From contig NC_068986.1 of NCBI RefSeq assembly GCF_001194135.2, positions 72,655,471-72,719,470 on the forward strand: a stretch of DNA of 64,000 nt, written 5' to 3'. The notes under the pieces were generated by a model that saw only the letters and a program-made list of their open reading frames with translations, was not told the origin of the DNA and did not search any database. Both the position numbers and the translations under genes were made by a program. This DNA comes from Octopus bimaculoides. Its lineage: Eukaryota. Within the stretch, counting starts at the first letter, position 1, and each line of letters opens with the position of its first letter. Of this stretch, positions 10,151 through 64,000 are shown in pieces.

Positions 10151-10743
10151 TCTGAAATCGAAATCGAACCGAATCCAACGACTGACACCCATGCCAACCT
10201 CTCCTTCATTGGACACTAAACTCTACTTGCGAAGACCTGTTGGGGCAAGTGAAATCGTAATTGACTTGATGACTGGCATACTCGATGACTGGCACCTGCG
10301 CCAGTGGAGCACTAACAGCACTGTCCGAGTGTGTTCATTGCCAGAGCAGCTGTCTGGCTTCCATGCTAGTGGCCCATAAATAGCACCATTTGAGAGTAAT
10401 CGTTACCTGCATTGTCTTCTAGCACTTGTGCTGATGGCACGTTAGAAAATCATTTGAGCGAGGTCGTTGCCAGTGCTGCTGGACTGGCTCCCATGCAGGT
10501 GGCATGTAAAATACACCTTTTTAAGCGTGGCCGTTGCCAGTACCATGTGACTGGCACATAAAAGCACCCACTACACTCTCGGAGTGGTTGGCGTTAGGAA
10601 GGGCATCCAGCTGTAGAAACTCTGCCAGATCAGATTGGAGCCTGGTGCAGCCATCTGGCTTGCCAGTCCTCGGTCAAATCGTCCAACCCATACTAGCCTG
10701 GAAAGCGGACGTTAAGCGATTATGATGATGATGACGATGATGA
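10151..10743 (+). mobile_element. RTE-tail-derived short retroposon (called family B here) with internal ~65-nt repeats and (GAT)n tail
   Basis: Its 5' part TTCATTGGACACTAAACTCT.CTTGCGAAGACCTGTTG matches the 3' UTR of the RTE at ~1310-1355 (minus strand). It ends ...GGAAAGCGGACGTTAAGCGATTATGATGATGATG. Confidence 0.85.
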
Positions 10744-23229: not shown

Positions 23230-24030
23230 CTATTGTCATGTGTTTAAAGATATGAAAACAGGAAAAGAAGCTGGTCCATCAAGTGTAGTTACTAAGATGC
23301 TGAATTCTGGCACTGTAGGACTCAAGCTAATCTTTCACATAGTCAATCAAGTAATTCAAAGAAGTTTTATACCAAATGAGTGGCATTTCAGTATAATCAT
23401 CAATTTCTACAAGGACAAGGAGATATTTCAGAAAAAAGCAACTACAGAGATATCAAACTAATGGACAAGATTATGAAAGTAATGGAAAGAACTTTAATAT
23501 AATTGATTAAGAACAAAATCACCTTAGATGAAATGCAATTTGAATTTGTACAAAGCTGGCAGTACTGCTGATGCATTTTTCATATGAAACAATTCCAAGA
23601 GGTATTTTCTGGCTAAAAATAAATCTCTCTGCCTTGCATTTGTTGATCTGGAGAAGGACTTTGATAAGATTCTACAATTTATAATCTGGTGGTCTTTAAG
23701 AAAACTAGGTATAGATGAATGGCTTGAGAGCAATGCAGGCCATGTACAGGAATGCAGTTAGTAAAGTGAGAGTTGACTAGAAATTTGGTGAGAAATTTAG
23801 CATGCAGGCAGGAACTCACCAAGTCTCAGTCCTCAGCCCTCTCCTATTTATTATAGCTCTCCAATCTATAACAAAGGAATTTAAGACTAGCTGTGTAGCT
23901 TCTATGTAGTTCCTATGAAAAAGTGGTCTAGTCCTTATAGCAGAGTCTGTGAAAGATCTACAGAAGAAATTTCAGACATGGAAGCATAACCCAGGATTAA
24001 GTGGCCTCAGAGTAAACTTTGCTAAGACTA
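23230..24030 (+). mobile_element. Heavily decayed RTE-clade RT fragment
   Basis: KEAGPSSVVTKML, IPNEWHFSIIINFYK, DEMQF, LAFVDLEKDFDK and GLRVNFAKT remnants, with many stops and frameshifts. Confidence 0.85.
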
Positions 24031-24031
24031 A

Positions 24032-25112
24032 TCGTCGTCGCCGTCGTTTAACGTCTGCTTTCCATGCTAGCATGGGTTGGACGATTTGACTGAGGATTGG
24101 TGAAACCAGATGGCTACACCAGGCTCCAATCTGATTTGGCAGAGTTTCTACAGTTGGATGCCCTTCCTAACGCCAACCACTCAGAGAGTGTAGTGGGTGC
24201 TTTTACGTGTCACCCGCACGAAGGCCAGTCAGGCGGTACTGGCAACGGCCACGCTCNNNNNNNNNNNNNNNNNNNNNNNNNNNNNNNNNNNNNNNNNNNN
24301 NNNNNNNNNNNNNNNNNNNNNNNNNNNNNNNNNNNNNNNNNNNNNNNNNNNNNNNNNNNNNNNNNNNNNNNNNNNNNNNNNNNNNNNNNNNNNNNNNNNN
24401 NNNNNNNNNNNNNNNNNNNNNNNNNNNNNNNNNNNNNNNNNNNNNNNNNNNNNNNNNNNNNNNNNNNNNNNNNNNNNNNNNNNNNNNNNNNNNNNNNNNN
24501 NNNNNNNNNNNNNNNNNNNNNNNNNNNNNNNNNNNNNNNNNNNNNNNNNNNNNNNNNNNNNNNNNNNNNNNNNNNNNNNNNNNNNNNNNNNNNNNNNNNN
24601 NNNNNNNNNNNNNNNNNNNNNNNNNNNNNNNNNNNNNNNNNNNNNNNNNNNNNNNNNNNNNNNNNNNNNNNNNNNNNNNNNNNNNNNNNNNNNNNNNNNN
24701 NNNNNNNNNNNNNNNNNNNNNNNNNNNNNNNNNNNNNNNNNNNNNNNNNNNNNNNNNNNNNNNNNNNNNNNNNGCACTGGCAACGATCTCACTCGAAAGA
24801 TTTCATGTGTTGCCCGCACATGAGCCAGTCTAGGGGCACCGGCAACGATCTCGCTCGAAAGATTTCATGTGTCACCCGCACATGAGCCAGTCCAGGGGAA
24901 CCAGCAACGATCTCGCTCGAAAATCCTACAACGGCCCCGCACAAGAGCCAGTCCAGGGGCACTGGCAACGGTCTCGGTCGAAAAATTTCTTGTGTCACCT
25001 GCACAAGAGCCAGTCCAGGGGCACTGGCAACGATCTCACTCGAAAGATTTCATGTGTTGCCTGCACATGAGCCAGTCCAGGAGAACCAGCAACGATCTCG
25101 CTCGAAAATCCT
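24032..25112 (-). mobile_element. Young family B retroposon with expanded 61-62-bp tandem array (spans gap 24257-24773)
   Basis: CpG-intact 3' end at 24032-24256. Units start at 24774, 24836, 24898, 24959, 25021 and 25083. The unit's reverse complement TTTCGAGCGAGATCGTTGCCAGTGCCCCTGGACTGGCTC matches the family B internal repeat. Confidence 0.85.
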
Positions 25113-25619: not shown

Positions 25620-26225
25620 AAGAGTACCCTTCAATCATTGGGCAATATACTGTGCTTGAGAAGACCTGTTGAGTCAAGTGAAATCATTGTTGTGGCCATT
25701 GCCAGTACCGCCTGACTGGCACCTGTACAGGTGGCATGTAAAAAGCACTATTCGAGCATGGTTGATGCCAGTCCCACCACACTGGCTCCTGTGCTGGTGA
25801 CACATCAAAAGCACCATACAAGAGTGGTCAATACCAGTGCCACCTGACTGGTCCCATGCCTGTGGCATGTAAAAAGCCCCATTCGAGCATGGTCGTTGCC
25901 AGTGTCGACTGACTGGCTCCCATGCTGGTGGCACTTAAAAAGCACCATTCAAGCGAGGTCGATGCCAATGCCATCTAACTGGCTCCCATGCTGGTGGTAC
26001 ATGAAAAAAACCATTCAAGTGTGGTCAATGCTAGTACTGCCTGACGGTGGCATATAAAACGCATTCACTACACTGTCGGAGTGATTGGTGTTAAGCGCAT
26101 GCTACTGTAGAAACTTTGCTGGATTCAGATTGGAGCCTGGTGCAGCCTCTCAGCATCCCAGTCCTCAGTCAAACCATCCAATGCATGCCAGCATGTAAAG
26201 CAGATGTCAAATGATGCTGAGTATG
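25620..26225 (+). mobile_element. Family B retroposon with about 5.5 diverged ~65-nt internal repeats
   Basis: Repeating TGGT..TTGCCAGT...CTGACTGGCTCC..TG..GGTGGCA..TAAAAAGCACCATTC units from 25693 to ~26060, followed by the family B 3' end. Confidence 0.82.
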
Positions 26226-26269
26226 ATTATAATAGCACCGTTTTTCTTTTTCATTTTCTGTTTTGTGCG

Positions 26270-26288
26270 TATATATATAATATATATG

Positions 26289-26357
<69 letters not shown>

Positions 26358-26471
26358 TTATGTATATAATATATATTATGTATATAATATATATTATGTA
26401 TATAATATATATTATATATATATAATATATATATATAATATATATATATATATAATATATATATATATATA
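26270..26471. repeat. Compound AT-rich microsatellite/minisatellite (18-bp unit ATATATATTATGTATATA) running into a gap
   Basis: Read directly; it explains the YNIYYV-repeat ORFs. Confidence 0.9.
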
Positions 26472-26794
26472 NNNNNNNNNNNNNNNNNNNNNNNNNNNNN
26501 NNNNNNNNNNNNNNNNNNNNNNNNNNNNNNNNNNNNNNNNNNNNNNNNNNNNNNNNNNNNNNNNNNNNNNNNNNNNNNNNNNNNNNNNNNNNNNNNNNNN
26601 NNNNNNNNNNNNNNNNNNNNNNNNNNNNNNNNNNNNNNNNNNNNNNNNNNNNNNNNNNNNNNNNNNNNNNNNNNNNNNNNNNNNNNNNNNNNNNNNNNNN
26701 NGTTCACCAGTCCTCAGTCAAATCGTCCAACCCATGCTAGCATGGAAAGTGGACGTTAAACGATGATGATGATGATATATATATGTGTGTGTGT

Positions 26795-27025
26795 GTGTAG
26801 CTGTGTGGTAAGTAGCTTGCTTACCAACCACATGGTTCCGGGTTCAGTCCCACTGCGTGGTACCTTGGGCAAGTGTCTTCTACTATAGCCTTGGGCCAAC
26901 CAAAGCCTTGTGAGTGGATTTGGTAGACAGAAACTGAAAGAAGCCTGTCGTATAATATATGTGTGTGTTTGTGTGTGTGTGTGTGTGAATGTTTGTGTGT
27001 CTGTGTTTGTCCCCCAATATCGCTT
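26795..27025 (+). mobile_element. tRNA-derived SINE family A
   Basis: TAGCTGTGTGGTAAGTAGCTTGC head, GGGTTCAGTCCC B box, CCTTGGGCAAGTGTCTTCTACTATAGCC core. Further degraded copies at ~13240-13400(-), 22255-22400(-), 28740-29010, 32200-32450, 32915-33100, 37350-37500, 38330-38640, 41175-41340 and 42280-42410(-). Confidence 0.85.
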
Positions 27026-27239
27026 CACAATCGATGGAGCCTGGTGCAGCCGCTGGCTCTCCAGACCTCAGTCAAACTGTCCAACCCAGGCCAGCATGGA
27101 AAACGGACGTTAAACGATGAAGATGATGATGATGAGTGAGACAGAGATAAGTGTCTTGCTGTAGTTATATGGATACCACTTGGAAAGGAGAGGAGAGTAA
27201 GTTACAGACTAAGATAAGGGAAGTGTGTAGTCATATATA

Positions 27240-31771: not shown

Positions 31772-33112
31772 GTAAGTTATTGGTTTTTATTCCTGCATTT
31801 CTTTTCTTTGGAGCTTTTTTTTCTTAATCAGAAGAAATGCCATATACTTGCAATAATTGTCAGTACCTCACATGTTGAAGTATCAAATTCTGCTTGAAGA
31901 ATTGGAAGTAATGTTTTCAAATTCTACTTAACATAATTTATCTAATTGGGAAATAGCTATATAAGTACTATAAAACATAACAAAAAAAACCTTTCCTTTC
32001 CTGATTTCTAGAAAATCATTTTCAAAGACTTATTTGTTAAAGTAAGATAACCACTACAAAGAAATGGCTATGTTTAGAAACAGAGCCAGGGTTATAGTTG
32101 AACAAACTTTAACATGTAAGACTTCAAATAGGAGAATGTAATGCTAGTTTACATTGTATACTTTACAGCTGTTGGTCAATTGATACAGTTAATAACCTCA
32201 AACTGTGTGAGTTTGGTTGATAGAAATTGTGTGGAAGCCTGTTGTGCATGTCTTTATGTCTGTCCTACCACCACCACCTATTGACAACTAATGTTAATTT
32301 GTTTACATCCTCATAACTTCACAGTTCAACAAGAGACAAAATAGTAACCTTAAAAAAATGCACTGGGGTTGATTTGATCAACTAAACCCTTCAAAGTGGT
32401 GTCCAAGCATAGCCAAAATCCTATGACTGAAGCAAGTAAAAGAATATATCTAAAACTAATAGCATCAACAGACTTATTTCATGTTACAGAGCTTGTTTAT
32501 TTAAAACTGGCCCAGGATACTTACAACAAAAGCAAATACATATTGTATGTATTTAGAAAACCATTGCGGAAACGTTTACTGTTATTAGAATGACTCTGTT
32601 TCAAAAATTGGTGTATAACTGTAGTAAAATTGATCACAATTTACTTAATCCCTAAAGGATTAATAATACTTTCAACTTCTCATTCCACTCATTTGCCTTT
32701 TCATCTCAACAAAAAGTGAAAAATTTGCTCAGATTACATTTTTATGACAATTTAGATGAGTTTTACAAATAGTGTTGTTGTCAGTGATGGTGGTGGTGGT
32801 GTCTATTATGGAATAAGAAGCCATGTTGATTTTGGGCTCTAACTTTTCGCCAAAATCTCTTTTTCTACCTTCCTTGGTGGTTGTTTGCTTGATATGTTTT
32901 TGTATAGTAGGTGCAGGTGTAGCTGTGTGATTAAGAAGCTTGCTTTCCAACCATATGGTTTGGGGTTCAGTCCCACTGCTCAGCACCTTGGGCAAGTGTC
33001 TTCTACTATAGCCTCAGGCCAAATAGAACATTGTGAATGGATTTGGTGGACACAAACTAAAAGAAACTTGTGTGCATATTTATGTGTGTGTGTGTGTATG
33101 TANNNNNNNNNN

Positions 33113-33166
<54 letters not shown>

Positions 33167-33899
33167 ACTTCATAATAATCCTTATTATTGATATACATAT
33201 ATGTGTGTGTGTATATGTATATATATATGCTATGCTACTTCATCACCCATTACACTCTCAGAGTGGTTGGCGTTAGGAAGGGTATCCAGCTGTAGAAAAC
33301 CATGCCAAATCAGACTGGAGTCTGGTGCAGCCTTCCAGCCCTGGTCAAACTGTCCAACCCATGCCAGCATGGACAATGGACCTTAAGTGATGATGATAAT
33401 ATATATATATATATGTCTTACGTTTAAGATGATCCCCATACATTTCCCTGAGGAGAAGTTTACATTTTTAACATCGACGATTCCTATGGATCGCATAAAT
33501 TGTAATTCTTTGAAACATATGTCGGAATAAAGTATGCAGTTATAACATGCGTTCACTCCATTCCTTAAATTTATATATACTCAAATACCCAAAATATCAA
33601 GGAGTTTCTGCCTCAAAAACAGGAATTACACCACAGTTATTTTGTGATCTTTGCTACCTTGGTTTTTATTAACCCATTTATTCTATCCGAATTATTATTA
33701 ATTAGGATAAAATAAATACATATAATTAAATATATATATAATGACACTCCAGTAGGGATACTGAATGTTCTGAATTGTTTCAAATCTACAAAATTTTCAT
33801 TTTCTCTTTAAAAAATGATGCTCAGTGATCCTGTATTAATGTTTAAACCAGTAAAATAAGAGTGAGAGAGTGAAAAGAGCATAACCGAGAAAGTGAGAA

Positions 33900-35723: not shown

Positions 35724-35808
35724 GTTAGTATGATGCAGGCAGATGAACATATCTAGAAAGTTTGTTCATAAGTTATATTGTAATGTCATCTAAAATGTAT
35801 TTCATTAA

Positions 35809-36026
35809 CCCTTTCGTTGCCAACCCAGCTGAAACCGGCTCTGGCTCTGAGAACAAATGTCTTGTTTTCATAAGTTTTGAATTAAAATCTTCCACCAAAC
35901 CTTAGTCACAATTTAGATTCCCAACACTAGCTGAATAACTAAGTTATTTTAACTAAATTCTTTGTTATATTTAAAGTAATTGAAAGAAACAGAGAGCATC
36001 TCAAAATTAATACAGTAATGAAAGGG
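35809..36026 (+). mobile_element. TTAA-flanked MITE (piggyBac-like), copy 1
   Basis: TTAA|CCCTTTC...GAAAGGG|TTAA; 218 bp, non-coding. Confidence 0.85.
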
Positions 36027-36617: not shown

Positions 36618-36837
36618 CCCTTTCCTTACTGTATTTATTTTGAGATGCTCTGTGTTTCTTTCAATTGTTTTAAATATAACAAAGAATTTAGTAAAATAAC
36701 TTAGTTATCATTAAGCTGGTGTTAGGAACATAAATTGTGACTAAGGTTTGGTGGAAGATTTTAATTCAAAACTTATGAAAACAAGACATTTGTACTCAGA
36801 GTCAGAGCCGGTTTCAGCTGGGTTGGTAACGAAAGGG
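36618..36837 (-). mobile_element. TTAA-flanked MITE, copy 2 (inverted relative to copy 1)
   Basis: TTAA|CCCTTTC...GAAAGGG|TTCA. Its reverse complement aligns end-to-end with 35809-36026. Confidence 0.85.
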
Positions 36838-39800
36838 TTCAGTGCTGTTATAATACATTTGCTAACAAAAAAATTAAGCCACCCAACATCACAAGCAGAA
36901 TATATATGGAGTTTAAAATCTCAGGGTATTGTTTTCGTATTGCAATGAGTATTATAGCCCCAGTGCCAACATGTACAGGTAACAAAAAACAGGTGTAGGT
37001 TTTGCACAATTGAATCTCTTAAAATACTTGTAGATGGTAATAAATTACTAAATCACAAAAACAAAAGTATAATTTCATGCATACATAAAGTTTTCAGAAA
37101 TTTTGAAATCTCCAAAAAAAACATCTACTAAGTAAAAAAGTAAGGTAAAGTGCAAACCATGCATCTATTTCTAATTACCAAAATAGAAAATTAAAGTCAA
37201 ATATTAATACCCTAATCATCCATCTAAAAAGAAGCTCATGCTATTCTACTGAAATTATTGTTGTTATTCTAATTATTGTCTTCTAATTGTTATTAATGTT
37301 AAGTTTTTTTTTCTCTACATAGCCACTATATACCTATAGTGCATAAAGAGCAGGAATGGCTGTGTGGTTGAGAAGTTCACTTCTTACCACATGGTTTCAG
37401 TTCAGTTCCTCAGTAGCACTTTGAGCAAGTGTCTTCTGCTGTAGCCTTAGACCAATCAAAGCCTGAAAAAAACTGAAAGAAGCCTTTTGTGTATTTATAC
37501 GAGTGTGTGTGTGGGGGGGGGGGGTGATCGTTGTAAATAGGTGATGTTCTTTGTTTTCAGTCATCTGTGAAAACATATCCAACTACAGGGAAATATTACC
37601 CTACTCAGAAACAGATGAGTGTTGGCATCTAACTGTAGAAAATCTACTTCAGCCCATGCAAGTATAGAAAGATAGAAAGTGCACATTAAAATGACAATGA
37701 TGTACATATTTGTATGAGCATAAATATAAGGACCCACATAGTTATTAATGTATATGAGTATATATGCAATTATACATATAGTTGTACATTTGTATATGTA
37801 TGGGTGTGTGTGTGTTATATACATTTCTACATAGGTATATGTATGTACATGTGTGTTTGCATTTATTTGAGTACATCTGTACAAGCATGTGTGTGTTTAT
37901 GAATGTATTTGCAGTTATGTGTGTGCATAGTATATGTAAGTGTATATAAATGTAAGCATGTACTCTATTTTTTTTTAATTAGCAGAAAGTAACAAAAGTG
38001 ACTCAAGGGCCACTTATCAAAATGTCTTCAAGTCAGGGAGTTTGTTGCTTTATATAGTGTATTATAATTCTTTCTTGAACACTTGATTAAAAATTAAATC
38101 AGGAGGTCATGTGAAGAACGTGTCTATTCACAGGAAAATATGTAATCTTTATTTATTTATCTATTTGTTTACTTTTGTAACTGTTCAGTTTACAGGCAGA
38201 TTATTTAAAATACGTGCATTTTTCATACAGTTTTCTAATTTCATTTTTAATTGAATGCTCCAGAAAGAGTTATAATTCATTCTATATGATGAGCTTGATA
38301 AATGTCATGCACTATTGCATGGCACCTTGAATAAGTGTCTTCTACATAGCCCTGTGCTGATCAAAGCCTTGTCAGTGGATTTAGTTGACTAAAATTGAAA
38401 GATGCCCATTATATATCTATGTGTGTATATGTTTATCTCTACCACTACTTGACAACCAATGTTAGTTTCTTTACATCCCTGTAACTTAGCAGTTTGGAAA
38501 AAGAGACCAATAGAATAAGTACCAGGTTTAAAAATAAATAAATAAATACTGGGGTTGTTTTGTTCAGCTAAACCCTTCAAGGTGGTGCTCCAGCATGACA
38601 TGCAATCCAGTGACTGAAACAAGTAAAGGATGAAAGATAAAGATTCTTGTTTTGAGTTCTATTGTTCTTGTTTGTCCTACTAAACTTGTGAACGTGTGTG
38701 TGTGTGTCTGTGCATATGTGTGTGTATGTCTATATGTATATATGTGTGTGTGTGCTTATGTATATGTAAATACGTGTACATATATGTATATATGTGTTTG
38801 TCTATAAATACACACACACACACACCCAAGTATTTATTGGTTAGCTGTCAAGTATATATAAAATGTATGATTGTTCTGTTGGAAGCTTTGAAATTTGATA
38901 CCTGCAGTTATTGATGCCCATTAACACTGGCACAGTGGGGGTAAAAAGTATTCCCTTCTCTACTATTATAAAGAAACTTCTCTACTCTTTTCACTTCGAA
39001 TTGAATATTTTTTTTTAATCTATTTTAGCACACTAGTTATGGTCTTTGATACAATAACACTACCCAATGTCCTTTATAAATCCCAAAGGTTATTTATGTT
39101 TGTTATGCAATATCTGAATATTTTATGACAGTCTGTTTATCAGTTTTCCCAGTATAATGGATATTATTGATACTAACATACATGTAAGATGATGTAACTA
39201 AATAATTTATGAGCAAACTCCAGTTTTGTTCTGTTCATATACTTTGTGATCTTTCAAGTTACTGAGACCAGTGAAAAGAAATTTGAACTATGATATGACT
39301 ACTCTTTATAGTTTTCTCTTTTGATACATAAGGATGTGTTTGGGGTTCTAAATACTGGTTATATGTTATGAAATTTAGATTTAAATCATACTATATAATT
39401 ATATTATATATACAAACACATCTGTAGGTATACTGTTTTGTAGACAGACAAACATACATACATGCCAATGTGCATATATACAATATAGATACAGAATAAC
39501 ATGACTAACACAATTTCCTCTTATTTACATTACATTATTACTTATTACATAACATTATTATTATGTTGAATCTATTCATACATTTATTGTCTATTTCATG
39601 TAATTTTAATATATGGCCAGTCTCTATCAGAAATACTTTCCACCCGAAACTCTATAATCTCACCCAGAATGTATCAGCCACTTGCATGCAGCCCTGTCTT
39701 AAATATATATCTATGCCTCGTGATCAATTACTGTTAACCTTTTACATTTACTGCTCATGCCTGATATTAAGTACCAGTTGAGCACTGGGGTCAATTTAAT

Positions 39801-42740: not shown

Positions 42741-44961
42741 GGTAATTGTGTTTGGCCTGCATCACCCACTTGACAGCAAGGAGAAAAGGCTGTGTGCATT
42801 GTTGTCAGCAGCTTCAGAATGCCTCCTGTTTTAGTACTGCAACTGTTTGAACTGCGTCACCTCTTTTCCTTTTGTCTTTGTCGTCATTTTTGCTGATTTC
42901 TATCTTATGCTATTCTCCTCTCTGGCCAGACTCAACATTTACAGCCTATTTAGCAACAAATTTCTATTTTGGCATTCATATCCTGATATGCAATTGAAGT
43001 GGGAGATTTGTTTAGAACAATCTACTAAATTTGATTATTTAAAAACACAATGGTGATAATAATGATAATAGTAAGAACAACAAGCATGCAATATTTTTTT
43101 TCTATCTCTACCATAACTGTATAGCAGAGTTCACTTTATATGCCTGTATTTTTGAAATGAGTTATTGCTTAAGTGATATGCATTGTGCAGACCAGTATCA
43201 TCATCTTTTGTTTTATTATCTATATTACATTTTGATCCCAACATTTTTTCTAATTGAATATAATGTTGATATAAACACAGATGATGACTTTATCTGATCA
43301 ATGTACACTACTCTAGATTTCAATTTGTGGATTTTGTTTAAAATTGACTCTGCATTTCAATGGATGAGGTACTGCAAAGTTGCTGATGTTATAAACAGAA
43401 GCAAATTTGCTAACATTTGGAATTGTTTATTCCCTTCTTTTAACATATATGTATACTATGTAATCAAAAACAGCAGAAAATTCTTTCTTCCAGTTAGAAC
43501 ACCCACCTAAATTTATTTTGGGAAATTGAAGGTAGTTTTGATTGTAATGATTAGTGAAATGCATAAACAATTTTATTTATTTATTACAGTTAAAATAAGT
43601 TAACTGCTGTTGTCTCACTTCTTACAAGATTATCTTCTATATTTTATGTTGCTATATTCCTGAAAAAAAAAAGCATTAATTTTTTTTTTCTCACTCCCTT
43701 TTTCTTCAGGGTCTTTTCATTTGCTATCTCTATATGTTCATGTTGCATTGCCTTGTCGGGATTTCCAACCTGCCAGACTGGCACATTCTGTATATTATTC
43801 TCTAATGTCATACATTTTGTATGGTTTTAGATTTTCCCTATCATTTTCGTGCAATTTATGCTTACTTCTCCTCTCAACTACATCAGTCTGATTAATATTT
43901 TTTGTACAACTATATCTATTCATCTTTTTCCAGTAAAGACATTCAAAATATTTTAAGTGAACAAGTTAGGACTGTGCCTGTCAACCAAAATATACAGATT
44001 TATATAGGAAGAAAAAAAAATTATTTATCCACAACAGTTCTTTATCATTTATATGTTTCCTGAATTCTTTGTACTTTTTTATTATCTAAGGACATTGAAA
44101 AAGTCACCTAAGTGTGCTTGCCTTGTATAACTCATAGCTGGTATGTTATCTTGCTATTAGAAAGCAAGTAACTACTGATGCATCAAAAAACTCACCATAG
44201 AATAGCCATCTGTATACAACAGAGCATAAAATAAAGGCTCTCTAGTCCAAGGATGTCAATTTAGTTTTTTAATCATGCTTAAATTACATTTTATTTAACA
44301 GGGAAAGAGCTGATTTTTAAAACTGCTTTGTTTCGTTTAGTTTTTGTTCACAGAAAATAACTTATTTTTCCTAATAACTTTTTATTCTATATTTTCACTA
44401 CATTTTAGCAAATTTATGTTCATTCACAAATTTATTTGCATATACTTATGATAAATCAAGATGACCTAATACCATGGAGAACTGTTAATCTATATTGTAA
44501 ATAACATCCTGCCAGCTTTTTATTCAGTGACTGAAAGAACTTTTCCTACATATTCTTGTTCTCTCTTCAGTAGCCAAGTTTGACCATTTAACAATTTTTG
44601 AATAAGCAGTGAAATCTAAAAAGTAATTTAATCTCACTTTGGTATTGTCACTCTAGTTGCAGAGCTGGCATTTTTCATTGCTATTAGAAAACCTTGAGAC
44701 ATCAGCTCAGTATCAAACCCTCAAGTATTTGAATAAAAGTAACCTTAGTCTGTTAGTTTTTTTTATTAGCCAAAGTGAACATAAGGTAGATAATTTATAT
44801 GCATATCTGTTGTATTTCTAAGAATAATCACCAAAAATTAAAATCAAAATTACATAGTATTAGGCAGTAATGTTTTCAGTTTAATCAAATTAAGAATTAG
44901 GATAACATGACAGCTTAAAATATTCAATAAGAAAGTGATTTACTTTTCAAACAAGTCTTAA

Positions 44962-46410: not shown

Positions 46411-46588
46411 TTAGTACTACAACTGTTTGAACTGCGTCATCTCTTTTCCTTTTGTCTTTGTCGTCATTTTTGCTGATTTCTATCTTATGCTATTCTCCTC
46501 TCTGGCCAGACTCAATATTTACAGCCTATTTAGCAACAAATTTCTATTTTGGCATTCATATCCTGATATGCAATTGAAGTGGGAGATT
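46411..46588 (+). repeat. 178-bp direct duplicate of FEZ 3' UTR segment 42831-43008
   Basis: Ungapped alignment at offset 3580 with three substitutions. Confidence 0.95.
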
Positions 46589-48450: not shown

Positions 48451-50337
48451 AAGATGACAAGTCAAAATAGTCAGGCACAATCAAAGGAAGAATGTGACTA
48501 GCAATGTGCAAGGATATCATAGTTTAAACACAAACAATTTGTCAAAACTGAGCAAATCCATAAAAAGTTTTTTTTTAAAAATGTTGCCATGCACGGTCTT
48601 GTTTCTACAGTAACCATTATTTTTTACTGTATTGTTGATCATATAGTCCAGGTACTAAAACCTTAGGGTAGTTCAGTACAGAGGAAACCTTGTCTATCTG
48701 TGGTCTTGGGCACAGATCATTCAGCAGTTTTTTAATGCCAACAGCTTTGTTTAGGATATGTAAGAGATAACATTTTTTCAAAGCATGTGCACATTGTCAT
48801 TCCAGTTAACTGACTGGTTACAAATGTTGCTAGGTAGACATTTTTCAGTGGTTAAAAATTCCACAAATCCAATGCATTTGATTTGAATGCAAAATTTAAA
48901 CTTGTGCTTAATAAGTAACAAATTAAAAATTAAATAAGTCTGGACATATCAGCAAATAATCCTTCAGTGACACCAGCCAACAATGAACATCACAGATCCA
49001 GTACCTGCACATTTTTCTTTCATTCATTCATAAAAACAAATATCCAGTAACCCATTTCAGCCACAATAAGTCCTTTATCGATCCAATACAGTATAAAAGA
49101 TAAATTGAGTTAATACTGCTGGACTGGGTTTTCTTGTTTGCACCAGGATTAAAGCAATGACTAGCCTCATACCAACCCTAATTTCATTACATTGGAACAA
49201 TGCAAGTAGCAATAATATAATTAAAACAGTGGCTTATACTGGAAGAAATCAGATAAGTATTTTAAACTGTTATGAAATAAAACAATTGCCAATAAGTTTT
49301 CATTATGGTTCAGTGGCAAAAGTCATAATTGATTGAAATCCTGTCAATGGAGCTAGACAGCAGAGTCAACAGGACAGTAAACAAAATACCATATTTAGCT
49401 AGTTCAAATCCCAAGCAGTAAATTTTGCCATTCATTCATCCTTCTGATGGTGCCAACAAGAAAGAAAAAAAAAAAAAACAAGAACAAAGCATATTAAATA
49501 TCAAAGAAAACTATTCAAGTTTATATCTCAGCAGATGTTGCCAATTTTATTGACTAAGATCACAGTACAATATTGAAGATGCAAAAGCCTAGCATTTGAA
49601 AAAGGAGCCATCAAAGCTTTTAAGCATCTTTCAAGATCCAGTCACATACACAAAACGTCTTGATTTCAAAATATTTATCTAACTATTCTTAAATCTTGCT
49701 TACATATATACTCTTAAGAAATTGTCAACCCATGTTTAAGATCAGAATAAAAAGCCAATTGTATATTTCTTAAAGCAGAGGCTAAAGAAATAAAAATAAA
49801 ACTGCAAAAGTAACCAATGAATGTCGTTTTATTTTTAGACCTACTTCAATGACAAAATCAAAATGTTTGTGTAAATTAAGTGAAATAGTTTTGGAGGTAA
49901 TCAAAATTTTTCAAGAGCAACCAAAACTATCCATTTACTAAATAAAAATGGGGATGTAGTTAGTTTTTGAGAAAATCTCCCAAAAGATGATGACTATTTA
50001 CAATGATTAAATGCATTGAAGAATGAAAGGGCAGGATACNNNNNNNNNNNNNNNNNNNNNNNNNNNNNNNNNNNNNNNNNNNNNNNNNNNNNNNNNNNNN
50101 NNNNNNNNNNNNNNNNNNNNNNNNNNNNNNNNNNNNNNNNNNNNNNNNNNNNNNNNNNNNNNNNNNNNNNNNNNNNNNNNNNNNNNNNNNNNNNNNNNNN
50201 NNNNNNNNNNNNNNNNNNNNNNNNNNNNNNNNNNNNNNNNNNNNNNNNNNNNNNNNNNNNNNNNNNNNNNNNNNNNNNNNNNNNNNNNNNNNNNNNNNNN
50301 NNNNNNNNNNNNNNNNNNNNNNNNNNNNNNNNNNNNN

Positions 50338-51258: not shown

Positions 51259-51332
51259 CCCTCATTTTTACGGTCCTTATGAGCATCAGCATATGTCACT
51301 TCACCAGCCTGTCGCATATAGTCTTTGAGATC
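51259..51332 (-). CDS. SRSF4/5/6: SRSF4/5/6 RRM2 exon
   Basis: TTCTTTCAAAG| acceptor and GG|GTAAGT donor. Encodes [24 protein letters not shown]. Confidence 0.97.
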
Positions 51333-54049
51333 CTTTGAAAGAACAGAAGCTATATTATAAATTTTAGTTAAAACTTCAAAAGCAAAATAACCATTCTATC
51401 TAACACTCTCACATACACTCAGATCACACAAGACACCTACCGGACAAATGTTACTAGAACAGAAATGGTCAAAGATTACAAAACTACATTTTAAAGAAAG
51501 CATCTGGTAAAAGTTCAGCTGGTAGTTACAGACAGGAACAATATGTTACTGAACAGTAACCACTAAACTGAGCTATAAACCCCAGGACCAGCCAGCTGAG
51601 CTGGACCAGCAGTGAAGTTTATTATTCAGTGTTGCAAAGACAGCATGTAAAAGTTCAAGCTGTTACAGCCACAAAACTTATGTTGATTTAATGAGAAACT
51701 CATTTCACCGAGTTCCTTGAATCTTTCTAAAATATATATCCAAATCTGATTTTGGAAAACTGCACCAAATGTTAAATAGTTTGCTTTAACAAGTTTCCTA
51801 GTTATTTATCATTATAATTAAAATTTTAAATAATTTAAATTACTCTAGAAAAAAATGTAAATATGAAGATGAACAGTGAAATTTGAAAATTAAAGTATCT
51901 TTAAATTATATAAAAAATATTTAAAAAAAAAAAAAAAGGAAAAAAGACTTAATGCCAGATGCTTTATAAAGTTTATATAGTAAACTAAACTAAAAACACT
52001 GATCACAAAATATGAGGAGGATTACAATTACCTCTCCTTGTACATTGCCATGTTTCTACGTCATTCACTAGCCCTGATAGATTGACCAAGTGACATCTAA
52101 TGGATGCGAGCAACCCTATTGCCAAAAGGAGAAGCAGCTTTGTGTGCGCCCATCCAGCCAGGATGGGGAAAGAAGAGGTAAGAGGTAACAAGCTTGCACT
52201 GCCTGTGCACAGCTGCCGAGGAAGCGGTGGCACCCGCCTGCCACACAGCCAGTCAGTTCAGAGTGGACTTCCCAGAAGACCAACCACATTGTGGGACTTC
52301 AGCCAGAGTGGAATAACGACAAGTACCAATTGGAAGAGTGGACCAGTGCAAAATAAGCGGAGCCAACACGTTCTGTAAGATGGTTCTATTCCAAGCCAAA
52401 AGGGAGCCAGCACGTAGGAAGAGGGCAGGCCACCCTCAGTTGGTTAGAAAGGGAAAACCTCCAGCCAGCCAGAACTTTAGCGCAACCCCAGATACATCTG
52501 ATTGCTTTGAGACCACTGCCCTCACGCACTCAGTATTTTGGACAGGCCAGTTCAACCCAAAAGCGTCTCATCGGCTGTCATCTGTACAAGCTTTCAGGGG
52601 AGAGGAAGAGTAGTTACAAGTCAGATGACATAATTAGTACACATTTCTAATAAAAAGGGCTTTCAGTATTTGTTTTGACTATACTTTTTATGTAAATATT
52701 TTATTACATCCTCAAGCAAAATGCATCTCTGATAAAAAGATGTATACCATACACACACACATATTTAAAGCATTCACTCTCACATGCAACTTTTACAATT
52801 TAAGAAAGGAAACCGTCATCACTGTACATTCATGCTGAATAAAACTATTCAAATAAATGTAAAGTGATGTCAGTCCTTTGGATATTTTGTCCCAATATAT
52901 TAAATTTTATGATTGTTTAAACAAGAACAAAACAAACACTTTAAAAGCCCCTTTTTCATAATGTAATAACCATCACAATATTAAAAATAACAAGAGATTC
53001 AACATTCCAAGTTTGAAGCAATACAAGCCTTGGTAATTAAACCTTATTTAATAAGTCACCTTAGTTGCATTAATTAGTTGTCTTTTATAATAGGAAGACA
53101 TTGGAATAAAAGAATCTCGTGTCAATCAAATATTAGGGATTCTGTAGAAAATAAACAAAAATTAGGCCCACTATAAATATAATCAACACTAAAACAATCA
53201 AAGTGAGATTAAATTAAAATTATTGTGATGTGTAATTGTCCTTTTTTAAAAAGATAAAACACCACGGAAGTGAAACCAAATTGGAAAAATCTTGCTTGAA
53301 AATCAAATACATCAACTTTTAAATATCAAGCAGAGTGCCAATTTAGCATCAATATTTATAGTGGGCCCACATAAGATACAAAACAATCTAGGGAAGTTGG
53401 CAAACATAATTACAACTACATATTCCACACCCCAAAAAATGCCCAGAACGAAGGAGAAAAGGGACGTAAATAAAATATTTTTCTTTCATCCTTTCCTGGG
53501 ACATTTGCTGTCAACACTGGAGTTTCCATCTTCACAAGAAATCTTGTTTCTGGTCGTCTTAATCACATTGCTAGATAATTCACAACTCGAGTTAAATCAA
53601 TCGGCAAATGTTCTCAATAGAAGTTGCAAATCCATTCTGATCAGTTTTGGTACATTTTTAGAGAGGGGGGGAGGGAAAGAGAATTACACTAGTAGCTTTA
53701 AACCAACCCACAAAGTGGTCCCTTTTCAATAAAAGAAATTTTAAGTGAATAATTAAAATCAAGTACAATGCAGTTTCAACTTTAAACATGCATTTTCCTA
53801 ATCAACACAATATGAATTTACAACAAATATGAAAAAAAAAAACAAATATTACAATTTTAAAAATAAAACAGCATTTACTAAAGCTTTAAGATATTCTCTA
53901 CAAAATCTGCCAAACTAGGTCGGACAAGTAAATAGTAATTGCTAAATTAAATTAATTACTAAACAGATTCCCAAACCTAGTTCAGCAGATACATAAAGTG
54001 TCGCTGTTGAAATACATAAGATAAGAAAAAAAATCAAATTCATAAATAC

Positions 54050-54119
54050 CTGCCAACTGACTCTAGATGATAAATTTTCAACTATAAGTCTGAACTCTGT
54101 CCTTGTGGGAGGCCCATAC
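54050..54119 (-). CDS. SRSF4/5/6: SRSF4/5/6 exon ending in the SWQ motif
   Basis: TAGCAG| acceptor and CAG|GTATTT donor. Encodes (K)[23 protein letters not shown]. Together with the next exon it forms the diagnostic SWQDLKD pseudo-RRM motif. Confidence 0.97.
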
Positions 54120-54572
54120 CTGCTATGAATTGAGAAACACAAAAAATCTGAAATTTTGTGTATGATCAAAAACTGAAAGATGCAAGCTCCTACTGTAAAA
54201 GTATTTTGAATGTTCTGTCCCCAGGGAATGCCATCCCAATTCAATTGAATGATACTAACAATGGCTTTGTGTAAATACAGAAATTATTACTTGACCTTTG
54301 GCAGCCCAATCAAGATCATGGAAACAATGGCACATTTTCACTAACCTGCTGTTAAAAGCATTAAAAATTACAGATTCAAAGCTTAATTTACAAAGGTGGT
54401 TATAATCTGCAGTCATGCATACATTACACAAGACCATATTTCTAAGTTCATTATACTCTTACAATTAATATACTTGAGCATTTTAAAACTTGTAACTGTT
54501 CACCCACTACACAAAAACACTATATCAACCTAAGCTATTTAGAAAGAGCACCAAAAAAAATGATATCCTCAC

Positions 54573-55538: not shown

Positions 55539-55661
55539 AACAAATCCATAGCCATTTTTCAGCATGATGTCTCTGATTCTACCGAATCCGCGGAAAAATC
55601 TCTCCACATCTTTCTCTCTGGCATGGTAAGACAAACGACCAATATACACTCGAGTTCCCAT
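55539..55661 (-). CDS. SRSF4/5/6: SRSF4/5/6 first RRM1 exon
   Basis: TTTGCTTTCCAG|ATG acceptor and GTT|GTAAGT donor. Encodes MGTRVYIGRLSYHAREKDVERFFRGFGRIRDIMLKNGYGFV. Confidence 0.97.
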
Positions 55662-55777: not shown

Positions 55778-55816
55778 ACGAGAAGTAGCCACGTCGTCCA
55801 TTGTAGTTTATATCGG
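55778..55816 (-). CDS. SRSF4/5/6: Predicted 39-nt upstream exon of the SRSF gene carrying an in-frame ATG (MDDVATSR, 55801-55778)
   Basis: CTGTCTCCCTTCAG| acceptor and CGT|GTGAGT donor. The ATG lies in ACTACAATGG context, 24 nt from the exon end, in frame with the next exon. Confidence 0.6.
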
Positions 55817-63758: not shown

Positions 63759-64000
63759 CATCATCATCATCATCATCATCGTTTAACGTCCGCTTTCCAT
63801 GCTAGCATGGGTTGGACGATTTGACTGAGGACTGGTGAAACCGGATGGCAACACCAGGCTCCAGTCTGATATGGCAGAGTTTCTACAGCTGGATGCCCTT
63901 CCTAACGCCAACCACTCAGAGAGTGTAGTGGGTGCTTTTACGTGTCACCCGCACGAAAACGGCCACGCTCGAAATGGTGTCTTTTATGTGCCACCCGCAC
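63759..64000 (-). mobile_element. Young family B retroposon 3' end (runs off the window)
   Basis: (CAT)n followed by CGTTTAACGTCCGCTTTCCATGCTAGCATGGGTTGGACGATTTGACTGAGG; near-identical to 24040-24230. Confidence 0.9.

What the first reader, a model, noticed from the sequence alone, without database searches (positions are those of the whole stretch)
52032..52590. Candidate poison (NMD) exon of the SR splicing factor, in the intron after SSRVSWQ
Seen: this intron (51333-54049, 2717 nt) is 4-23 times longer than the gene's other introns (116-612 nt), yet I recognise no SINE or LINE in it. It contains a GC-elevated block with 14 CpGs in 559 nt, bounded on the sense strand by CUGAC/GUAAC, a pyrimidine tract UACUCUUCCUCUCCCCU and AAG| (52590; alternative CAG| at 52581), and by the donor GAG|GUAAUU (52032). 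Spliced to SWQ it reads LVQMTADETLLG* (TGA 52554-52552), far upstream of later junctions. A second internal acceptor (long pyrimidine tract, 7-bp hairpin CCCAUCC-UGGCU-GGAUGGG at 52149-52167, AAAG| at 52137) gives a 106-nt frameshifting exon with a stop in the next exon. Known: SR genes autoregulate through AS-NMD. From memory, the exon layout matches human SRSF5, whose unproductive event is in this same intron and is reported as ancient. Inference: this is the cephalopod version of that homeostatic switch, with two exon lengths sharing one donor.
Basis: partly seen in the sequence, partly recalled or inferred. Interest (0 to 1): 0.8.

Follow-up and report, generated by a model that had tools for sequence, protein, structure and literature searches.

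The report
Probable poison exon, cuttlefish SR gene
The GC-rich block in the long intron of this cuttlefish-type SR splicing-factor gene is very probably the mollusc version of the ancient SRSF5 "poison exon", which shuts off surplus mRNA; this was expected, not new, and it has not been confirmed by RNA data from this species.

Summary
The minus-strand gene is an SRSF4/5/6-family SR protein with the SRSF5 exon layout. Its SWQ|DLKD intron (54049-51333, 2717 nt) is 4-23 times longer than the other introns. It contains a 559-nt block (52590-52032) with 51.5% GC against 29.5% for the rest of the intron, the GC-richest 500 nt of the window.

The block starts at the best-scoring acceptor of 124 AGs in the intron and ends at the fifth-best of 173 GTs (GAG|GTAATT). 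Inclusion gives SWQ-LVQMTADETLLG-TGA, with the stop 520 nt before the next junction.

Independent support:
- The deposited Acanthosepion pharaonis protein CAE1322964.1 joins SWQ to this same acceptor and reads into the block, but in a shifted frame, so the peptide is not conserved.
- The same intron in a mussel, an oyster and a gastropod holds a GC-rich block of 407-527 nt.
- In mussel a metatranscriptome contig shows that block is a 466-nt stop-bearing cassette exon, with the same GAG|GTAATT donor.

No repeat, Rfam, tRNA or Pfam signal was found. No sequence similarity between mollusc classes was detected. The proposed 106-nt short exon has no support.

This is a new member of the known SRSF5 unproductive-splicing switch (Lareau and Brenner 2015). 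Inclusion, NMD and autoregulation in this species remain untested.

The parts
54050..54119 (-). Constitutive exon 5 (K)[23 protein letters not shown]. It ends in phase 0 with a weak donor, CAG|GTATTT.
   Evidence: tblastn and manual model; donor score 5.1.
51333..54049 (-). Intron 5, 2717 nt, which splits SWQ|DLKD in RRM2. It is the positional equivalent of human SRSF5 intron 5.
   Evidence: Intron positions match paddlefish SRSF5. PMC4379411.
52591..52638 (-). 3' splice-site region of the candidate exon: TACTAAT, CTGAC and GTAAC branch-point-like motifs, the pyrimidine tract CTACTCTTCCTCTCCCCT, and AAG|.
   Evidence: Read. Acceptor ranks 1 of 124 AGs in the intron. The same junction is used by A. 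pharaonis CAE1322964.1.
52032..52590 (-). Candidate poison cassette exon, long form: 559 nt (length mod 3 = 1), 51.5% GC, stops in all three frames.
   Evidence: Architecture is shared with the mussel (transcript-verified), oyster and gastropod blocks.
52552..52554 (-). First in-frame stop (TGA) after SWQ-LVQMTADETLLG. It lies 520 nt upstream of the exon's 3' junction.
52026..52034 (-). 5' splice site GAG|GTAATT, non-consensus at +5. The nine bases are identical to the mussel (verified) and oyster (predicted) poison-exon donors.
52155..52472 (-). Five copies of the heptamer CTGGCTG (52466-52472, 52462-52468, 52300-52306, 52246-52252, 52155-52161), plus CTGGCTC at 52404-52410. These are candidate protein-binding (enhancer) sites; what they do is inferred, not shown.
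   Evidence: Observed 5 against 0.27 expected; none of 5000 dinucleotide shuffles reached 5. A count of 5 or more for any 7-mer occurred in 1 of 2000 shuffles. Six of the 10 window matches lie in this intron on the sense strand.
52149..52167 (-). 7-bp hairpin CCCATCC-TGGCT-GGATGGG ahead of the proposed internal acceptor (AAAG| at 52137). It is present in the sequence but not statistically notable.
   Evidence: The 52137 acceptor ranks 59 of 124.
51259..51332 (-). Constitutive exon 6, [25 protein letters not shown].

Best explanation
The block is an alternatively included, non-coding 'poison' cassette exon of an SRSF5-type (B52-like) SR splicing-factor gene.

Proposed mechanism: when the exon is recognised, exon 5 (…SWQ) is spliced to 52590 and 52032 is spliced to exon 6. 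The mRNA then carries a stop 12 codons into the 559-nt insert and a frameshift, so it can only encode RRM1 plus half of RRM2. It is expected to be degraded by nonsense-mediated decay. By analogy with other SR genes, inclusion is expected to rise with SR-protein activity, giving negative feedback on expression.

The weak flanking signals (AAG acceptor, GTAATT donor, and the weak GTATTT donor of exon 5) make inclusion dependent on exonic enhancers. The five CUGGCUG copies are the best candidates for those.

Shown here: the sequence anatomy, the stop and frameshift, positional homology, use of the acceptor in a sister species' gene model, and a transcript-proven homologous exon in mussels.

Inferred: inclusion in this species, NMD, autoregulation and the role of the motifs.
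For: 1. The gene is an SRSF4/5/6-family member with the SRSF5 intron layout. [quoted passage not shown]

2. The block begins at the best acceptor in the intron and ends at a top-5 donor, exactly where GC drops.

3. There is a stop after 12 codons, 520 nt before the next junction. All three frames are closed.

4. A. pharaonis protein CAE1322964.1 reads ...SSRVSWQ|LVQMTADETLFGLNWPVLNECVRAVVSKQSDVTGVALKFWLAGGLPF. This is the same acceptor and the same DNA (89% identity over 36 residues), but in a different frame from the window, with the stop at a different place. The sequence is kept while the peptide is not, as expected for a non-coding exon.

5. In Mytilus californianus, Saccostrea echinata and Gigantopelta aegis the SWQ|DLKD intron is the longest in Saccostrea and Gigantopelta. 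In all three it holds one GC-rich block of 452, 407 and 527 nt, with GC 0.43-0.49 against 0.26-0.35.

6. Contig L006 joins the SWQ exon, a 466-nt insert and the DLKD exon. The insert maps to the mussel block and gives SWQRPQR*. Logan transcript contigs L002-L005 also run from SWQ into a stop-bearing exon and end at GAG|G.

7. The donor GAG|GTAATT is shared by the cuttlefish, mussel and oyster.

8. Many database isoforms from other animals end a few residues after SWQ.

9. There is no copy elsewhere in the window, and no Rfam, tRNA or Pfam match. The RNA folds less well than its shuffles (z = +1.76), so it is not a structured RNA.
Against: - There is no RNA evidence from this species. The A. 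pharaonis entry is a gene model whose evidence base I could not check.
- Genome-wide copy number could not be measured, so a transposon-derived origin is not excluded.
- Conservation against a neutral baseline in cephalopods could not be measured. Only about 141 nt of one sister species is visible, and only through a protein.
- No primary-sequence similarity to the mussel, oyster, gastropod, annelid or paddlefish introns was found. Homology therefore rests on position and architecture.
- The 3' boundary is not proven. An internal donor, TGC|GTGAGG after 52526, would give a 65-nt exon that still contains the stop.
- NMD rules in molluscs have not been characterised.
Confidence: 0.75

Rival explanations
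1. The block is a GC-rich insertion, such as a transposon fragment or other neutral sequence. On this reading its splice-site-like ends are cryptic or only occasionally used, and it has no regulatory role.
For: The other GC-rich stretches of this window are mostly SINE-like repeats. No cross-class sequence conservation was found. Genome-wide copy number was not testable.
Against: There is no second copy and no similarity to the window's repeat families. No Pfam domain was found, and no protein relative other than the A. pharaonis model exists among 1.84 billion representatives. The same kind of block sits in the same intron in three other mollusc classes or orders and is a real exon in mussel. 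The intron's best acceptor lies exactly at the block's edge.
Confidence: 0.1
2. The operative unproductive event here is retention of intron 5, or premature polyadenylation, rather than cassette inclusion. On this reading the block is an intronic platform for regulators that slows splicing of the intron.
For: Retention also gives an early stop ([10 protein letters not shown]...LI*). PMC4379411 reports retention next to the alternative exon in many species, and retention alone in fungi. Several database isoforms after SWQ start with V (GT...), consistent with retention.
Against: The A. pharaonis model is spliced at the 52590-equivalent acceptor rather than reading through from exon 5. The mussel contig is a clean cassette with both junctions. 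There is no AATAAA or ATTAAA in the block or in the 330 nt after it. The two events are not mutually exclusive.
Confidence: 0.1
3. The block is a true coding alternative terminal exon that produces a functional truncated protein containing only RRM1.
For: A. pharaonis CAE1322964.1 is deposited as a 192-aa protein ending in the block.
Against: The peptide after SWQ is 12 residues here and 47 in A. pharaonis, because indels shift the frame. There are stops in all frames, no domain and no polyadenylation signal. The tails in other molluscs are unrelated and 2-29 residues long.
Confidence: 0.03
4. The block is an independent element such as a structured non-coding RNA, a CpG-island promoter or enhancer, or an antisense gene.
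For: High GC content; open reading frames of 91-92 aa on the plus strand.
Against: No Rfam or tRNA hit. The fold is weaker than in 96 of 100 shuffles. CpG observed/expected is 0.38. No Pfam hit for the ORFs on either strand.
Confidence: 0.02

Closest known systems
Human and vertebrate SRSF5 (SRp40) intron-5 poison cassette exon, and its counterparts in lancelet, sea urchin, Drosophila B52, C. elegans and sea anemone (Lareau et al. 2007; Lareau and Brenner 2015, PMC4379411)
   Same: Same gene subfamily and same SRSF5-type exon layout. The same intron (SWQ|DLKD in RRM2) is involved. [quoted passage not shown] That intron is also unusually long.
   Different: No sequence similarity to a vertebrate (paddlefish) SRSF5 intron was detected, whereas the paper reports human to sea-urchin similarity. 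No transcript, NMD or binding data exist for this species. Molluscs were not among the taxa in that study.
Mussel poison cassette exon documented here (contig L006 mapped to Mytilus californianus L007 23212-23663)
   Same: Same intron. It is a long exon (452-466 nt, against 559 nt here), richer in GC than its flanks. It has an AAG| acceptor, the identical GAG|GTAATT donor and a stop within a few codons of SWQ.
   Different: The sequences cannot be aligned. The enriched motifs differ: TGATG/GATGA in the bivalve exons, CTGGCTG in the cuttlefish and partly in the gastropod.
SRSF6 and SRSF4 intron-2 ultraconserved poison exons of vertebrates
   Same: The same regulatory logic (alternative splicing coupled to NMD) in paralogous genes.
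   Different: [quoted passage not shown] According to PMC4379411, SRSF4 and SRSF6 lack the SWQ|DLKD intron altogether, so they are not homologous to this block.

Membership tests
SRSF5-type ancestral unproductive-splicing event (intron-5 poison exon or retention) | The host gene is an SRSF4/5/6-subfamily SR protein with the SRSF5-like exon-intron structure. | tested here: met
   tblastn model. Best hits are SFRS4_5_6, B52 and SRSF4/5/6. Exon boundaries are identical to those of paddlefish SRSF5.
SRSF5-type ancestral unproductive-splicing event (intron-5 poison exon or retention) | The alternative exon lies in the intron equivalent to human intron 5, between ...SWQ and DLKD... of RRM2. | tested here: met
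   The block at 52590-52032 lies inside intron 54049-51333. PMC4379411.
SRSF5-type ancestral unproductive-splicing event (intron-5 poison exon or retention) | Inclusion introduces a premature in-frame stop well upstream of later exon junctions. | tested here: met
   TGA at 52554-52552. It is 520 nt before the exon's 3' junction, 594 nt before the exon 6/7 junction and 714 nt before the exon 7/8 junction.
SRSF5-type ancestral unproductive-splicing event (intron-5 poison exon or retention) | Transcripts that include the exon exist. | tested here: inconclusive
   No RNA data for this species were reachable. Sister-species gene model CAE1322964.1 uses the acceptor. Mollusc transcript contigs L002-L006 show the homologous event.
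SRSF5-type ancestral unproductive-splicing event (intron-5 poison exon or retention) | The exon-included isoform is stabilised when NMD is inhibited. | not testable with these tools
   This needs cycloheximide treatment or UPF1/SMG1 depletion followed by RT-PCR or RNA-seq.
SRSF5-type ancestral unproductive-splicing event (intron-5 poison exon or retention) | The exon is under purifying selection relative to the flanking intron. | tested here: inconclusive
   Only the A. pharaonis protein tail is visible (89% identity over 36 residues in a non-coding frame), and no flanking intron is available as a baseline. Between mollusc classes nothing can be aligned.
Autoregulated SR-gene poison exons | The SR protein, or other SR proteins, binds the exon and promotes its inclusion. 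| not testable with these tools
   There are only motif hints: CTGGCTG five times, and one near-match, GCACAGG, to the SRSF5 SELEX heptamer TCACAGG. That heptamer is exact in three bivalve exons.
Transposon- or SINE-derived exon | Multiple dispersed copies, or similarity to a repeat family or a transposon protein. | tested here: not met
   No other copy in the 64-kb window. No Pfam hit. Only one true relative was found among 1.84 billion proteins. Genome-wide copy number was not tested.

The most novel reading that the evidence does not exclude
Across molluscs, over more than 500 million years, the SRSF5-type poison exon may have kept its architecture while its sequence and enriched motif arrays turned over completely. 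The kept features would be one long (about 400-700 nt) GC-rich exon in the longest intron, a weak acceptor and a fixed suboptimal GAG|GUAAUU donor. The motif arrays differ by lineage: CUGGCUG in the cephalopod and gastropod, UGAUG/GAUGA in bivalves. That would imply that the regulator or its binding code changed while the feedback switch persisted.
Probability: 0.3. Interest if true: 0.5.

Novelty: new member of a known kind. Interest (0 to 1): 0.3.

Why it matters
It adds the Mollusca, including cephalopods, to the phyla in which the oldest known conserved alternative-splicing event, SRSF5 unproductive splicing, can be recognised. It also gives exact junctions to test.

For genome annotation, it explains why a truncated 'SFRS4_5_6' protein is deposited for A. 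pharaonis: it is probably the NMD isoform, not a real protein.

Comparing the mollusc exons suggests that architecture and a weak GUAAUU donor are conserved rather than sequence. This bears on how such switches are maintained. It does not change current understanding, because the 2015 study already predicted the event to be near-universal in animals.

Tried and rejected
- Fetching the A. pharaonis locus by its protein failed: it is not on record.
- A full-length protein search, intended to find other cephalopod orthologues and their loci, returned no cephalopod.
- A six-frame translation of the block used as a protein query returned nothing. It also missed its positive control, P0001, so I treat it as uninformative.
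- The exhaustive HMMER search with the 39-aa frame found P0001 plus three repeat proteins. I judge those three to be chance matches inflated by internal repeats.
- Two exact-pattern scans of metagenome contigs, one with a block 21-mer and one with the end of exon 5, found nothing.
- blastn and nhmmer between the cuttlefish intron and the mussel, oyster, gastropod, annelid and paddlefish introns or transcript tails gave only AT-rich chance hits.
- Rfam, tRNA, Pfam and RNA folding gave no sign of an RNA gene or a coding exon.
- The SRSF5 SELEX heptamer TCACAGG is exact in three bivalve exons but has only a one-mismatch match here. That is too weak to build on.
- One protein lookup for a land-snail locus also failed.
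Full report
**What is there**

The minus strand of the window carries an SR splicing-factor gene of the SRSF4/5/6 subfamily. A probe search and manual splice-site reading give these exons:

| Exon | Coordinates (minus strand) | Note |
|---|---|---|
| 1 | ends at 55778 | 5' UTR |
| 2 | 55661-55539 | start ATG at 55661 |
| 3 | 55360-55290 | |
| 4 | 54677-54573 | |
| 5 | 54119-54050 | ends ...SSRVSWQ, phase 0 |
| 6 | 51332-51259 | [11 protein letters not shown]... |
| 7 | 51069-50950 | |
| 8 | from 50682 | RS domain; runs into an assembly gap at 50040-50337 |

The introns measure 116, 178, 612, 453, 2717, 189 and 267 nt.

The block at 52590-52032 is 559 nt, 51.5% GC, with 14 CpG, against 29.5% GC in the rest of the intron. 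It is the GC-richest 500-nt stretch of the whole window. CpG observed/expected is 0.38, so it is not a CpG island.

**Splice signals and reading frame**

Upstream of 52590 lie TACTAAT, CTGAC and GTAAC, then an 18-nt pyrimidine tract and AAG|. With a crude acceptor score this is the best of the 124 AGs in the intron, and it scores above most of the gene's constitutive acceptors. The donor GAG|GTAATT after 52032 ranks 5 of 173 GTs and scores above the constitutive donors of exons 2 and 5.

The scoring is rough. Applied to the mussel intron, where the true sites are known from a transcript, it ranks them 8 of 96 and 4 of 98. The cuttlefish sites do at least as well.

Splicing SWQ to 52590 gives LVQMTADETLLG followed by TGA at 52554-52552. 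The stop lies 520 nt before the exon's 3' junction. The exon length is 1 mod 3, and every frame has five to eight stops.

The proposed CAG| at 52581 is present and keeps the same frame and stop. The proposed 106-nt short form exists on paper, with its stop in exon 6, 162 nt before the exon 7/8 junction. Its acceptor ranks only 59 of 124. By my own rough estimate, not a tool result, a perfect 7-bp hairpin in 559 nt is not unusual by chance (about 0.2 expected).

**What it is not**

- No Rfam family or tRNA matches.
- The sense RNA folds less stably than 96 of 100 dinucleotide shuffles (z = +1.76).
- ORFs on either strand hit no Pfam family.
- The intron has no second copy in the window. The window's other GC-rich stretches belong to multi-copy SINE-like families.
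- There is no AATAAA or ATTAAA in the block or in the 330 nt after it.

**Evidence from a sister species**

A protein search with the predicted stop-bearing isoform returned one near-identical hit, 'SFRS4_5_6 [Acanthosepion pharaonis]' (CAE1322964.1, 192 aa). Its sequence runs ...SSRVSWQ|LVQMTADETLFGLNWPVLNECVRAVVSKQSDVTGVALKFWLAGGLPF.

In the window the same DNA reads LVQMTADETLLG* in one frame and LNWPVQNTECVRAVVSKQSDVSGVALKFWLAGGFPFLTN* in another. The two species therefore differ by small indels that shift the frame and move the stop. The sequence itself stays close, at 89% identity over 36 residues in an exhaustive HMMER search that found no other true relative among 1.84 billion proteins.

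Nucleotides kept while the peptide is not kept is what a non-coding poison exon predicts. I could not retrieve the A. pharaonis DNA. I could not check what evidence that gene model rests on.

**Evidence from other molluscs**

I fetched the orthologous loci of three species:

- Gigantopelta aegis: L001
- Mytilus californianus: L007
- Saccostrea echinata: L008

The SWQ|DLKD intron is the longest in Saccostrea and Gigantopelta. In all three species it contains one GC-rich block bounded by an acceptor and a donor:

| Species | Block length | GC, block vs rest of intron | Donor | Peptide after SWQ |
|---|---|---|---|---|
| Cuttlefish-type window | 559 nt | 0.515 vs 0.295 | GAG\|GTAATT | LVQMTADETLLG* |
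| Gigantopelta | 527 nt | 0.49 vs 0.35 | AAG\|GTAAAT | RIMTGSRRSELTASLRGGDQNCRNRSTLR* (29 residues) |
| Mytilus | 452 nt | 0.43 vs 0.26 | GAG\|GTAATT | RPQR* |
| Saccostrea | 407 nt | 0.49 vs 0.31 | GAG\|GTAATT | PH* |

For Mytilus the block is a proven exon. A JGI metatranscriptome contig (L006) carries the SWQ exon, a 466-nt insert and the DLKD exon. The insert maps to the GC-rich block at 77% identity and gives SWQRPQR*.

Four Logan transcript contigs from unidentified molluscs (L002-L005) also pass from SWQ into a stop-bearing sequence (LTQP*, LAML*). They end at ...GAG|G, where spliced and unspliced paths would diverge in an assembly graph.

Many deposited isoforms from insects, spiders, fish and sharks likewise end a few residues after SWQ.

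**Limits of the homology**

No primary-sequence similarity links the cuttlefish block to any of these exons or introns, or to the paddlefish SRSF5 or Capitella introns (blastn and nhmmer). Homology is therefore positional and architectural.

Motif content differs by lineage:

- The bivalve exons are enriched in TGATG/GATGA.
- The cuttlefish block carries CTGGCTG five times. Expected is 0.27; none of 5000 shuffles reached 5. Any 7-mer reached five copies in 1 of 2000 shuffles. Six of the ten window matches lie in this intron.
- The gastropod shares CTGGCT.

What binds these motifs is unknown.

**Comparison with what is known**

Lareau and Brenner 2015 (PMC4379411) showed that the ancestral animal gene had the SRSF5 structure. 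[quoted passage not shown] They also found NMD-sensitive retention of the same intron in Neurospora, and they called the event essentially universal in Metazoa. No mollusc appears in that paper. Full-text searches found no paper on SR poison exons in cephalopods.

The cuttlefish gene's intron positions match a vertebrate SRSF5 gene exactly. The block is therefore best filed as a new, expected member of this known switch.

**Verdict**

- The main interpretation is well supported by indirect evidence. I put it at about 0.75 that this is an alternatively included unproductive exon. I am somewhat less sure that its 3' end is exactly 52032, because an internal GTGAGG donor after 52526 would give a 65-nt exon that still contains the stop.
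- The short 106-nt form, NMD sensitivity, autoregulation and coleoid-wide conservation remain unshown.
- Interest is modest, because the result was predicted by earlier work.
- The most interesting residue is that mollusc exons keep their architecture and a weak GUAAUU donor while losing all alignable sequence.

Noticed in passing
window 54119-54124 (minus strand): The exon 5 acceptor is a tandem TAG|CAG| (NAGNAG). Using the upstream AG would replace K with NR at the exon 4/5 junction.
   Followed up: no
window 55801-55778 (minus strand): Exon 1 contains an ATG (MDDVATSR) that is in frame with the main ATG after splicing. The A. pharaonis model instead has a different 22-residue N-terminal extension (MTFLLLRGGAPAIIHKWKKKIN).
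   Followed up: no
window 51441-51660 (minus strand), same intron: A smaller GC bump downstream of the block holds a sixth CTGGCTG (51589-51595). It also holds the best-scoring donor of the intron (CCG|GTAGGT after 51441) and acceptors at 51595 and 51518. The 78-nt version is in frame with no stop; the 155-nt version has stops. It could be a second cassette exon or chance.
   Followed up: partly
window 52526-52590 (minus strand): An internal donor, TGC|GTGAGG after 52526, would give a 65-nt exon that still contains the TGA. The A. pharaonis model reads across this site, so it is not used in that model.
   Followed up: partly
window 50040-50337: A run of 298 N interrupts the RS-domain exon, so the C-terminus and stop codon of the SR gene are not assembled. 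The window has four other N runs (1582-1915, 24257-24773, 26472-26701, 33103-33112).
   Followed up: no
window about 10450-10740, 24030-24220, 25680-27130, 33240-33400, 63760-63960: Several multi-copy SINE-like repeat families occur in both orientations. Examples are ...GGCGTTAGGAAGGGCATCCAGCTGTAGAAA... and GTCAAAC.GTCCAACCCATGCCAGCATGGAAA.... They account for most of the other GC-rich stretches in the window.
   Followed up: no
window 42831-43008 and 46411-46588; 35807-35936 and 36710-36839: There is a 178-nt direct repeat at 98% identity, 3.6 kb apart. There is also a 130-nt inverted repeat at 94%, 773 nt apart, together with a nested 83-nt pair, which looks like a possible small foldback element.
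   Followed up: no
L009 5617-5781 (Polyodon spathula SRSF5 locus): The deposited paddlefish 'SRSF5 factor' protein carries a 55-residue in-frame insert between SWQ and DLKD. The insert is taken from the GC-rich middle of the same intron. It is probably an alternative or poison-exon region annotated as coding.
   Followed up: partly
L003 472-1168, L002 467-1062, L006 522-987: Bivalve-type poison exons are packed with TGATG, GATGA and GATGT (for example 14 TGATG in L003). Three of them contain the exact SRSF5 SELEX heptamer TCACAGG. The cuttlefish block has only GCACAGG.
   Followed up: partly
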